The notes beneath the pieces were generated by a model. The model had not been told where the DNA came from. It did no database searches and saw only the letters and a program-made list of their open reading frames with translations. A DNA stretch of 61,926 nt, filler included, from Sluysia triapertura (taxonomy: Eukaryota): assembly GCA_046118255.1 (NCBI GenBank). It is 5 parts of 5 records of this genome, joined end to end, with 100 filler letters (N's around TTAATTAATTAA, not from the genome) between each part and the next. Parts side by side here need not be neighbours in the genome. Positions count along the whole stretch, not along the records: positions 48,997 to 61,926 come from JBJNIA010072059.1; 4 more parts are not named here. One strand, 5' to 3'. The position numbers were made by a program, and so were the translations under genes. Below are positions 52,230-54,900 of this stretch, in pieces; position 1 is the first letter of the stretch, and each line of letters begins with the position of its first letter.

Positions 52230-54900
52230 TCAACGCCAACCTATCATTAACATCTACACAAAACTGCACCCAATTGATCAAACGATTTTTTTCAGATCAC
52301 AAATTTGTCTGAAAGTAAAAATATGTATAAAATATTTAATTTTAAAATATAAATAAAATAAGTAAATTAAGTGAATTATAAATTTTACTGAATTCGTTTT
52401 TAAAATGGGACTTAATATCCTTATTCATTGATGGCAAATGATAAAACAGATAAAGTCGAACTTTTTATTAATACTCAAATGCGAATAATAAAATTATAAG
52501 TAAAAATTGTAATTTTAGTAATTGTAATATCATTAGTTCACAGGTTATTAGAAGTCTCGATATTCGTAGTCTAGATGGAATGATTTTCATGATCGTAATG
52601 GTTATATTACTCATATTAATGATTATATTAATCGTAATTATAATTAATATGTTGCTTAGGACAAAGGAGAAAATTAAATTAAAGTATGAAACGAAAAGCA
52701 GGCTTCGTAATATACTTTCGTTGTTTCATTTTATTAATTCTTTGATGTTCTGTTAATTTCAAACCAAGAACATTTATTTTCACCTCTAAATTGTCTTCTA
52801 TTTCTGACTAGCTTAAGAGAAGTTATTTCAAGCTTCTGAAATTTAAGTATCACTTTAAGTACGTCAAACTTCGAGTCTTAAGATATACTTGTTCCTGCAT
52901 TGGTTACATGGACATCTGCTTCTTTACCTGTTTGTATCATATTGAAAACTGACAAATTTAAAACACATTTAAAATTCATCATGGATTCGATAAACAAAAA
53001 TCAAAACCTATAACTGTCCATCTATGGATTTTCTTTTCAACTGCAAGTAGACGAATATAGCTTAAATTTTTTTATAAAAGAATTTAACTGGCTTAAATTG
53101 AATTTTGATACCAAAACGAATTCTATATTTCTCAATTCAATTTCAAAGGCTTTCAATTATTATCAATTTGATTTTTAGGTAGCTCCCTCAATAATTAATA
53201 TTTAAACAAAAAAACAATTCATTTTTAAAAATTAAATAATTCTCAAAACCTATAATAAAGATCCTAACTTTAAACATATTAACAATAGACTTAGTTAATT
53301 CTAAATATTCATTATTATCATTTTTTGAGCACGAGTACGTCGATTTTAATAAACATATATCATAACGCATTGTCATATCCCAAAGTGAAATATAATTTAT
53401 ATTACTTGACCAATATTTATGATTTATGTACATAAATAAGCTTCCATTTTTGAACAATGATCTTACCAACAGTTATTGTAAGTTAGAAATTTTGAATCAG
53501 TATTCTTATCTGGATGGAGTGGAAGTGCATACGGAATAACGTTAACCAAACAAAATTTCCTCAAATATTTGTCCACAAATTTCACCAAAACATTTGATGA
53601 TTCTAAGAAGATTGTAAGAAGATTGCTTCATTCATTCCAATTTCTACTAATTTCGCTTCAAAATTGTTTAGTTTGAAATTGGTATCTGTTAAAGGTTTTG
53701 ATCTTTTCGGTAAGGAACAACCTCTAGAAGAAAAAGGATCAACAGATAAAGTTTTATTTATAAAAATTTTAGATGTTAAATTCAGTCTTCTGTATGTGTC
53801 TCCACTGAAGTTGCACGTTCGGCTATCTGAAGAACAAACATAATTTATAATATTTATAAAAGTAAAAGAATAAATTACTTTTAGATAGTTCGTAAATGAT
53901 TTATTGTTAACAGGTATCGTTGTCGATACACTAAGGCTCTTGACTAGTTCGGAAATTCTCAATTCGCACGCCGTGTGGGCGTAACGAGAATAAATTCCAT
54001 TCTTCATACATATTCCATAATTATCTGTGGCGAATTGACAAAAGGCGATCATGTTAGCTTTGTAAGCATCTTGTTTACCATTAACTTCGTGATAATCATT
54101 ATTGTTACGTTTAGCTTTATGATCATCATCTTTATAATCTTTTAGATCATCGTATAAAAGTAGGTAAGTTATAGTCTACCTTTTGTATGTTCAGAAGGTG
54201 ATTGTACGATGTTGAAATGTGATTTAATTGAATTGTTAAGAAATGAGAAATGAAATATTTGGATGAATTTTTGCTGTAATTTAATGATTTAGAATGTTAT
54301 GAGATTATGGATTTAGTTGATATTAAAGGATGAAGATGTTTTTAATAGATGTAAAGAGATAAATATGGGAATGTTACAATGTTTAAGAGTATAGTTTTAT
54401 ATACAATGTGTTAATTTAGCTTAATATTGTTATTTGTTGATTTTTTGAATCTGAATTGTAGGGAATGGTTATTAGGTTAGTGACAGTTTATGTAAAGTTT
54501 TAATAAAATGTATTAGGAAAATAGGGTGGCCACAACAGAAATTTTAATAAAATTTACCAAGTATTTTGCCGGAGTTTCAGCACACACTGAATCTTTCTTG
54601 AAGAGTTCGCCCGTCATTCATTCTAGGATTATGGCACCACTTTTCTCCATCTTCTGATTGGTTAAATTTCACTTTTAAATAGAATGTCTTCATCTTCAGT
54701 GATAAGCTCTGTTGTTACTTCGTCATTTCTTCTAATAAGTTGACATTCTTGTCGACATCGTCTGATTCAAATTTGCTGGCTTGAATAAATCTTATAGCCT
54801 CGATTTTCAAAATGTCATTTTTGCAAAAATTCCCTTTATATACAAATAATTAAATGTAGAATATTTTAGAATATTTCGGGACGCTTGAGATATTGTTCTT
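52230..54900 (-). pseudogene. Decayed multi-exon gene: unknown N-terminal region fused to a RIO2-like kinase (RIO2 part ~52390-53290)
   Basis: LKAFEIELRNIEFV, RWTVIGFDF, IQTGKEADVH (TGKEADVH at 52908-52931), ILKFQKLEITSLKLVRNRRQF..CSWFEINRTS, KVYYEACF in RIO2 order; an 11-bp tandem duplication (53604-53625) explains one frameshift; interrupted by a solo LTR. Confidence 0.7.
54210..54537 (-). mobile_element. Solo LTR inserted into the pseudogene
   Basis: TGTTG...CAACA termini, TATATAAA on the minus strand, strong strand skew; coding-like sequence resumes on both sides; no TSD seen. Confidence 0.5.

What the first reader, a model, noticed from the sequence alone, without database searches (positions are those of the whole stretch)
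52230..54900. Amplified RIO2-derived kinase fused behind a long novel N-terminal region
Seen: beyond the listed ORFs, minus-strand frames give LKAFEIELRNIEFV, RWTVIGFDF, SVFNMIQTGKEADVH, ILKFQKLEITSLKLVRNRRQFRGENKCSWFEINRTS, KVYYEACF and IKSHFKNEFS, directly downstream of roughly 400 codons of unrecognised spliced coding sequence. Lesions include an 11-bp duplication, stops and a solo LTR; the catalytic HGDFNEFN/IDFPQ segment is not recognisable in this copy. Established: these blocks match RIO2 (LTAVEMGMKNHEIV, YRLT..GYDY, GVGKESDIY, LKLHRLGRTSFR..KNKRDY..SW, KALYE..F, IKDFF.KRF), a usually single-copy 40S-maturation kinase that starts at its winged-helix domain. Inference: a lineage-specific expanded family of divergent RIO2 fusion (pseudo)kinases, either an effector-like expansion or cargo of an unknown DNA element. 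This copy lies antisense, downstream of an internal ZNRF exon, so probably within its intron.
Basis: partly seen in the sequence, partly recalled or inferred. Interest (0 to 1): 0.85.

Follow-up and report, generated by a model that had tools for sequence, protein, structure and literature searches.

The report
Dead RIO2-like gene copy with extension
This stretch of a very AT-rich animal genome holds a broken copy of a gene whose rear half descends from the ribosome-maturation kinase RIO2, behind a long unknown front part; it is a few-copy decaying relic, not a working kinase.

Summary
A profile of 11 Pfam-verified archaeal Rio2 proteins hits one place in the 12.9-kb piece, 52722-53102. It scores 14.6 bits (E 4e-6), and none of 300 shuffles reaches that. 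With X at two frame breaks the score is 28.4 bits over profile positions 18-158, against 2.0 bits for a Rio1 profile. The RIO2 descent of the winged-helix/N-lobe part is therefore real.

The catalytic half (HGD, IDFPQ) is absent, and IKSHFKNEFS has no support. Upstream, 54175-53157 (about 340 codons) needs only 3 lesions to read through, against 8-15 elsewhere. One lesion is the 11-bp tandem duplication at 53604-53625. A single ancestral frame joining front part and RIO2 part is plausible but not proven.

The front part carries a degenerate Unkempt-type CCCH finger and has no relatives among 1.84 billion proteins. Contigs of the one public run holding this DNA show the RIO2 part in about 5 copies. 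Its first ~700 bp (53758-54485) occur in roughly 70-250 copies. The locus lies antisense, downstream of a ZNRF1-like RING exon. 'Spliced', 'solo LTR' and 'effector' remain unsupported.

The parts
52722..53156 (-). RIO2-derived remnant. Winged-helix remnant at about 52985-53156. Kinase N-lobe at 52722-52984: P-loop remnant QTGKEA, beta-3 Lys in ILKFQ, then TSLK..RNRRQF..SW.
   Evidence: Own Rio2 profile. Identity to single archaeal Rio2 proteins is 22-31% over 127 columns.
52999..53080 (-). Stretch best read in another frame (RWTVIGFDF block), implying two frame breaks near 53080 and 52999.
   Evidence: Switching frames with X at the breaks raises the profile score from 21.1 to 28.4 bits.
52878..52880 (-). 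In-frame stop between the P-loop and the beta-3 Lys.
52731..52736 (-). Two consecutive in-frame stops after SWFEINRTSKN.
52230..52721 (-). Where the RIO C-lobe should be. No HGD or IDFPQ is recognisable. Contains an AT-rich low-complexity run at 52471-52725.
   Evidence: No profile hit in any frame; tandem repeat at 52602-52646.
53157..53627 (-). Middle of the front part: stop-free pieces 53466-53627 (54 codons) and 53191-53472 (94 codons), with no recognisable domain.
   Evidence: lesion count 2 in 450 nt against a background median of 6.
53604..53625 (.). 11-bp tandem duplication that shifts the frame at the end of the 190-codon frame. The same reading goes on in the next frame below it.
53606..54175 (-). 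190-codon stop-free frame; first in-frame ATG at 54052.
   Evidence: No relative among 1.84 billion representative proteins. AlphaFold pLDDT 34.6.
53957..54046 (-). Unkempt-type CCCH zinc-finger remnant (C-x10-C-x6-S-x3-H). The third ligand is Ser here but Cys in about 96% of the family's depth.
   Evidence: Pfam zf-CCCH_UNK 27.7 bits, below the 31.1 cut-off; PDB 5elh E 0.65; variant 53988 G>C.
53758..54485 (-). High-copy repeat module: G-poor leader (about 54180-54485) plus the first ~135 codons of the frame.
   Evidence: Contig depth 1000-10000 against a single-copy depth of 15-20; unique contigs stop at 53802 and resume at 54449.
51418..51533 (+). ZNRF1-like RING exon of the host gene, ending in AG|GT in the phase that ZNRF1 needs.
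   Evidence: PDB 5ywr ZNRF1, E 4.4e-17; Pfam RING hits; no last exon in the piece.

Best explanation
Positions 54175-52722 (minus strand) are a dead copy of a lineage-specific multicopy gene or element. Its ancestral reading frame was one long, apparently intron-less frame of about 485 codons or more. A front part of about 340 codons began with an Unkempt-type CCCH zinc finger and is otherwise unrecognisable. It ran straight into a strongly diverged RIO2 module (winged helix plus ATP-binding N-lobe).

In this copy the frame is broken about nine times: an 11-bp tandem duplication, about five frame shifts and three stops. The catalytic C-lobe is gone or replaced by low-complexity sequence. The copy therefore makes no kinase and does nothing, sitting antisense in what is probably an intron of a ZNRF1-like gene.

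Shown: RIO2 homology, the lesions, the near-open frame, the copy numbers and the host exon. Inferred: that front and rear were one protein; that the founder was a diverged RIO2 paralogue rather than the housekeeping gene; that the unit spread at DNA level, with its 5' module spreading much further, as with deletion derivatives or 5'-module sharing. If the intact protein existed, the likeliest activity is an RNA-binding RIO2-like ATPase or pseudokinase. That is inference only.
For: RIO2 homology:
- The six-frame profile search hits only 52722-53102 (14.6 bits, E 4.4e-6).
- 0 of 300 shuffles reach that score.
- The X-joined path scores 28.4 bits over profile positions 18-158.
- The Rio1 profile scores 2.0 bits; the N-lobe alone scores 18.6 bits against a shuffle maximum of 5.8.
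- Identity to single archaeal Rio2 proteins is 22-31%.
- Variants in paralogous contigs change TSLKLVRNRRQF to TSFKQVRNKRQY, closer to the RIO2 motif TSFR..K.KRDY.

One frame:
- 54175-53157 needs 3 lesions, against 8-15 in background and in 500 shuffles.
- 54175-52722 needs 8, against 13-22.
- The 11-bp duplication sits exactly where the 190-codon frame ends, and the reading continues in the next frame.

Diverged founder: there are only 3 stops in about 145 RIO2 codons, where random AT-rich sequence would give about 12. Yet invariant RIO2 residues (the G in RLGRTS, the D in KRDY) are missing in the paralogue too.

Multicopy: depth is 53-85 over the RIO2 part and 1000-10000 over 53758-54485, against a baseline of 15-20.
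Against: - The junction at 53196-53157 holds two frame breaks and several stops within 40 nt, and RIO2 similarity starts at the protein's native N-terminus. Both would also fit two juxtaposed units.
- The 5' module is 15-50 times more abundant than the RIO2 part, and the bin 53364-53560 between them is single copy.
- No intact member, transcript or relative of the front part was found.
- Each piece searched alone gives no Pfam or PDB hit to RIO.
- The winged-helix part alone is not significant (4.0 bits).
Confidence: 0.55

Rival explanations
1. Two unrelated relics lie side by side. A copy of an abundant repeat carrying a CCCH-finger frame landed next to an ordinary decayed duplicate or retrocopy of RIO2. 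There was never a fusion protein.
For: The copy numbers differ 15-50 fold and 53364-53560 is single copy. The junction has two frame breaks and stops in 40 nt. RIO2 similarity begins at profile position 18 of 289, the native start of the protein.
Against: The frame stays open for about 200 codons beyond the repeat's edge near 53760, with only 3 lesions in 601 nt. None of 500 shuffles reaches 3, though the lowest of 176 background windows also reaches 3. It ends exactly where RIO2 begins, on the same strand. The RIO2 part is too diverged for its low lesion density to be a plain decayed copy of a conserved housekeeping gene.
Confidence: 0.3
2. A live, spliced, expressed gene: the apparent lesions are short introns or assembly errors.
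For: The frames on this strand are unusually open. A GT..AG candidate lies at 53827-53878.
Against: That candidate is 52 nt long and would break the frame. Stops lie inside conserved RIO2 blocks. The run's own contigs match the window with 0 differences across the lesions (records 2 and 3). No RNA run holds the stretch. The C-lobe is missing.
Confidence: 0.05
3. Chance resemblance to RIO2 in AT-rich sequence.
For: Single pieces give nothing in Pfam, PDB or the Atlas.
Against: Profile E-value of 4e-6 to 6e-11; 0 of 300 DNA shuffles and 0 of 500 residue shuffles reach the score; the blocks are collinear with correct spacing; the paralogue is closer to the motif.
Confidence: 0.03

Closest known systems
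RIO2 / RIOK2 (Pfam Rio2_N PF09202 + RIO1 PF01163), the pre-40S maturation ATPase/kinase
   Same: Same order and spacing of blocks: winged helix, GxGKE P-loop, beta-3 Lys, TSF..K.KR.Y..SW. The remnant scores as Rio2, not Rio1.
   Different: It has a front extension of about 340 codons and no recognisable catalytic loop or IDFPQ. Several invariant residues are lost, the frame is broken, and there are about 5 copies instead of one.
Unkempt-type CCCH zinc fingers (Pfam PF25427; PDB 5elh)
   Same: C-x10-C-x6-C-x3-H spacing followed by ELR in the family majority.
   Different: Only one finger. The score is below Pfam's cut-off, the third Cys is Ser in this copy, and the rest of the protein is unrelated to Unkempt.
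Host-gene fragments amplified by DNA elements (Pack-MULEs, Helitron gene capture)
   Same: A piece of a normally single-copy housekeeping gene is present in several decaying copies next to a high-copy module. This comparison rests on my own knowledge.
   Different: No terminal inverted repeats, target-site duplication or hairpin end was found in the 12.9-kb piece. The frame looks like one protein rather than a chimeric fragment.
Lineage-specific expanded kinase families (FIKK of Plasmodium; ROPK of Toxoplasma, PMC3682881)
   Same: The idea of a diverged, multiplied kinase or pseudokinase with a novel N-terminal region.
   Different: Those are ePK-fold families with intact, expressed, secreted members. 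Here no intact member, signal peptide or expression is shown.

Membership tests
RIO2 kinase | RIO N-lobe: P-loop GxGKES, beta-3 Lys, flexible-loop motif TSFR..K.KRDY..SW | tested here: met
   The N-lobe profile scores 18.6 bits against a maximum of 5.8 in 500 shuffles; alignment. GKE, the Lys, TS and SW are kept. The first P-loop Gly, the G of RLG and the D of RDY are lost.
RIO2 kinase | Rio2-specific N-terminal winged helix (Rio2_N) | tested here: inconclusive
   Pfam finds nothing on single pieces. My N-part profile scores 4.0 bits, not above shuffles. The full-profile alignment does run from position 18 through the helix and gains about 10 bits.
RIO2 kinase | Closer to Rio2 than to Rio1 | tested here: met
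   28.4 bits against 2.0 bits with archaeal profiles.
RIO2 kinase | Catalytic loop HGDxxxxN and metal-binding IDFPQ | tested here: not met
   No hit to profile positions 165-289 in any frame of the piece. The best candidate, LINWVQF, scores -5.7 bits and lies out of order.
RIO2 kinase | Intact open reading frame | tested here: not met
   3 stops and at least 2 frame breaks within the RIO2 part.
Unkempt-type CCCH zinc finger | Four zinc ligands C-C-C-H with the family's spacing, and a Pfam score above the cut-off | tested here: inconclusive
   27.7 bits against a cut-off of 31.1. The third ligand is Ser here, but Cys in 1579 of 1638 depth units of the family.
Solo LTR / LTR retrotransposon | Element bounded by TG..CA with a target-site duplication, or a second LTR | tested here: inconclusive
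   No LTR pair turned up in the repeat search or self-BLAST. The high-copy module starts near a TGT at 54485, but the reading frame runs out of its other edge, which an LTR would not explain.
DNA transposon with captured gene fragment | Terminal inverted repeats or Helitron ends flanking the unit | tested here: not met
   The module's outer end has no inverted partner within 48997-61926. Ends outside the piece cannot be seen.

The most novel reading that the evidence does not exclude
The genome carries a young, mobile or tandemly spreading family. Its founder protein joined an RNA-binding CCCH finger and a novel ~300-residue region to a RIO2-derived winged helix and nucleotide-binding lobe. 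This would be a new RIO-family architecture, possibly a pseudokinase acting on ribosomal or other RNA. Intact expressed members would exist elsewhere in the genome.
Probability: 0.25. Interest if true: 0.7.

Novelty: new variant of a known kind. Interest (0 to 1): 0.42.

Why it matters
RIO2 is one of the most conserved and most strictly single-copy ribosome-assembly factors. A lineage in which it was duplicated, strongly diverged, given a long zinc-finger-bearing front part and multiplied would be an unusual case of a core ribosome-biogenesis ATPase being recruited for something else. It could alternatively be a case of such a gene being carried around by a repeat. At this locus the copy is only a relic, so the value lies in pointing to a family whose intact members should be sought in the full assembly.

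Tried and rejected
- Pfam on 19 single pieces gave no RIO hit.
- PDB phmmer on two RIO2-like pieces gave none.
- ESM Atlas on the 47-residue piece and on the 190-residue frame gave only sub-threshold, composition-like hits.
- phmmer of the 190-residue frame against 1.84 billion representatives gave 0 hits.
- Metagenome and viral contig scans with that frame found no relatives.
- AlphaFold on the 190-residue frame gave pLDDT 34.6, which is unusable, so no fold search was run.
- A ciliate or other variant genetic code was rejected, since no code makes the frames open.
- A 52-nt GT..AG intron at 53827-53878 was rejected because it would break the frame.
- The N-terminal link LLRELPKNQ as the RIO2 start adds no score.
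- LINWVQF as the IDFPQ remnant scores -5.7 bits and is out of order.
- No tRNA-derived SINE or Rfam family was found.
- The literature has no report of a RIO2 expansion of this kind.
- One search printed PDB RIOK2 alignments. I only looked at them and reused them in no tool.
- The frame-joined reading (X at the breaks) was used only in local scripts and sent to no database tool.

Full report
**Setting.** The piece 48997-61926 is about 25% G+C, uses the standard genetic code and is animal DNA. A plus-strand exon at 51418-51533 matches the RING domain of ZNRF1 (PDB 5ywr, E 4.4e-17). It ends in AG|GT in the phase that ZNRF1's next residue needs. The last ZNRF exon is not in the piece. The finding therefore lies antisense, downstream of this exon and probably in an intron longer than 10 kb. 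No alternative code opens the frames.

**Observation.** Taken one at a time they mean nothing to the libraries:
- Pfam gives no RIO hit for any piece.
- PDB phmmer gives none.
- The ESM Atlas gives none.

**Testing the RIO2 claim.** I needed RIO2 sequences that a tool had supplied.
- A degenerate DNA pattern for the RIO catalytic motif, scanned over prokaryotic genomes, returned 120 loci.
- Eleven archaeal ORFs have the Rio2 layout. Ten were checked and all carry Rio2_N plus RIO1 in Pfam. They form alignment A1.
- A profile of these eleven was searched against the six-frame translation of the whole piece, with stops written X. It hits one place only, minus strand 52722-53102, with 14.6 bits and E 4.4e-6. 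The next best hit in the piece scores -1 bit.
- None of 300 dinucleotide shuffles of the piece reaches that score; the maximum is 7.6.
- The RWTVIGFDF block lies in another frame. Reading frame 2, then frame 0, then frame 2, with X at the two breaks (near 53080 and 52999), raises the score from 21.1 to 28.4 bits. The alignment then covers profile positions 18-158 of 289.
- A Rio1 profile scores 2.0 bits. The kinase N-lobe alone scores 18.6 bits, against a shuffle maximum of 5.8. The winged-helix part alone scores 4.0 bits, which is not significant.
- Identity to single archaeal Rio2 proteins is 22-31% over 127 columns. Those proteins share 30-86% among themselves.

An independent hint comes from paralogues. 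Variants carried by paralogous contigs turn TSLKLVRNRRQF into TSFKQVRNKRQY, which is closer to the RIO2 motif TSFR..K.KRDY.

The remnant is therefore truly RIO2-derived, from the start of the winged helix to the end of the N-lobe. Nothing matches profile positions 165-289 in any frame. The catalytic HGD and IDFPQ segments are absent. Below 52722 the sequence turns into AT-rich low complexity.

**The upstream part.** The 190-codon stop-free frame 53606-54175 is by far the longest in the piece.
- Its only recognisable feature is one CCCH finger of the Unkempt type. Pfam zf-CCCH_UNK scores 27.7 bits, under the 31.1 cut-off. PDB 5elh gives E 0.65.
- The frame has no relative among 1.84 billion representative proteins, nor in metagenome or viral contigs.
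- It folds to nothing (pLDDT 34.6).
- The frame ends at an exact 11-bp tandem duplication, 53604-53625. Just below it the same reading goes on in the next frame for 46 codons (53466-53627). A 94-codon piece follows (53191-53472), and 35 nt further the RIO2 similarity starts.

I measured frame openness with a small dynamic programme that counts the fewest stops and frame shifts needed to read through a stretch.

| Stretch (minus strand) | Lesions needed | Background / shuffles |
|---|---|---|
| 54175-53157 | 3 | 8-15 (0 of 500 shuffles reach 3) |
| 54175-52722 | 8 | 13-22 |
| 54900-54176 | 8 | background-like |

The front part is therefore about 340 codons, or about 300 counted from the first ATG at 54052. 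It needs no introns. The one GT..AG candidate (53827-53878) is 52 nt long and would break the frame. 'Spliced' is unsupported.

**Copy number.** One public run holds the stretch, and no RNA run does. I laid its contigs on 51000-56900 at 80% identity or more. Single-copy depth is 15-20.

| Region | Summed depth | Approximate copies |
|---|---|---|
| RIO2 part | 53-85 | about 5 (own contig plus two others) |
| 53364-53560 | 20 | 1 |
| 53758-54485 | 1000-10000 | 70-250; several hundred near 54310-54400 |

- One of the other RIO2-part contigs lacks 58 nt between the P-loop and the lysine, so it is damaged too.
- The high-copy stretch 53758-54485 is the G-poor leader plus the first ~135 codons of the frame.
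- At 53988, 96% of the family's depth reads Cys where this copy reads Ser. The family founder therefore had an intact C-x10-C-x6-C-x3-H finger.
- Seven of the nine best-supported differences between this copy and the family majority change the amino acid, as expected for neutral decay.

**Interpretation.** The near-open frame crosses the edge of the high-copy module and runs about 200 codons further, stopping exactly at the RIO2 start on the same strand. The simplest reading is one ancestral protein: CCCH finger, then a novel region, then diverged RIO2.

The RIO2 part has only three stops in about 145 codons, where random sequence of this composition would give about twelve. Yet it lacks residues that are invariant in RIO2, and so does its paralogue. 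Its founder was therefore probably an already diverged paralogue rather than the housekeeping gene.

The much higher abundance of the 5' module fits deletion derivatives of a DNA-level repeat, or a 5' module shared by a larger family. I could not find element ends.

The main rival is two unrelated relics side by side. It is kept at 0.3 for three reasons: the junction is badly broken, RIO2 similarity starts at the protein's native N-terminus, and the copy numbers differ 15-50 fold.

Either way this copy is dead, with about nine lesions and no catalytic half. The effector idea and the solo LTR could not be tested or found.

**Limits.**
- The comparison used archaeal Rio2 only, so the origin (host RIOK2 duplicate or foreign) is unresolved.
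- Other copies were seen only through the tables.
- The frame-joined reading was used only in local scripts with X at the breaks.

Noticed in passing
window 55531-56318: A second repeat family with contig depth 400-900, about 25-50 copies. Many contigs carry internal skips of 130-650 nt, as if copies differ by deletions or the unit is internally repetitive. No ORF or Pfam hit.
   Followed up: partly
window 54475 / 55726: The run's own 4-kb contig covering 55726-56900 starts with 27 letters that fit 54449-54475. The contig covering the 1250 nt in between has lower depth (11 against 18). This may be an insertion polymorphism or a graph artefact. The 27-letter side is too short to trust.
   Followed up: no
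window 51985-52378: A moderately repeated stretch (depth about 180-210, roughly 10 copies) just below the RIO2-like remnant.
   Followed up: partly
window 57800-58565: An island of higher G+C (36-42%) with stop-free pieces of 55-92 codons on both strands. No Pfam family matches.
   Followed up: partly
window 51394-51590: The ZNRF1-like RING exon bin has depth about 75, suggesting several similar RING exons or paralogues in the genome.
   Followed up: no
L001-L120 (genome contigs): Most hits of the RIO catalytic-motif pattern were proteobacterial ORFs of about 290 residues with IDLPQ instead of IDFPQ and no Rio2-type N-terminus. This is a large bacterial RIO-like group.
   Followed up: no
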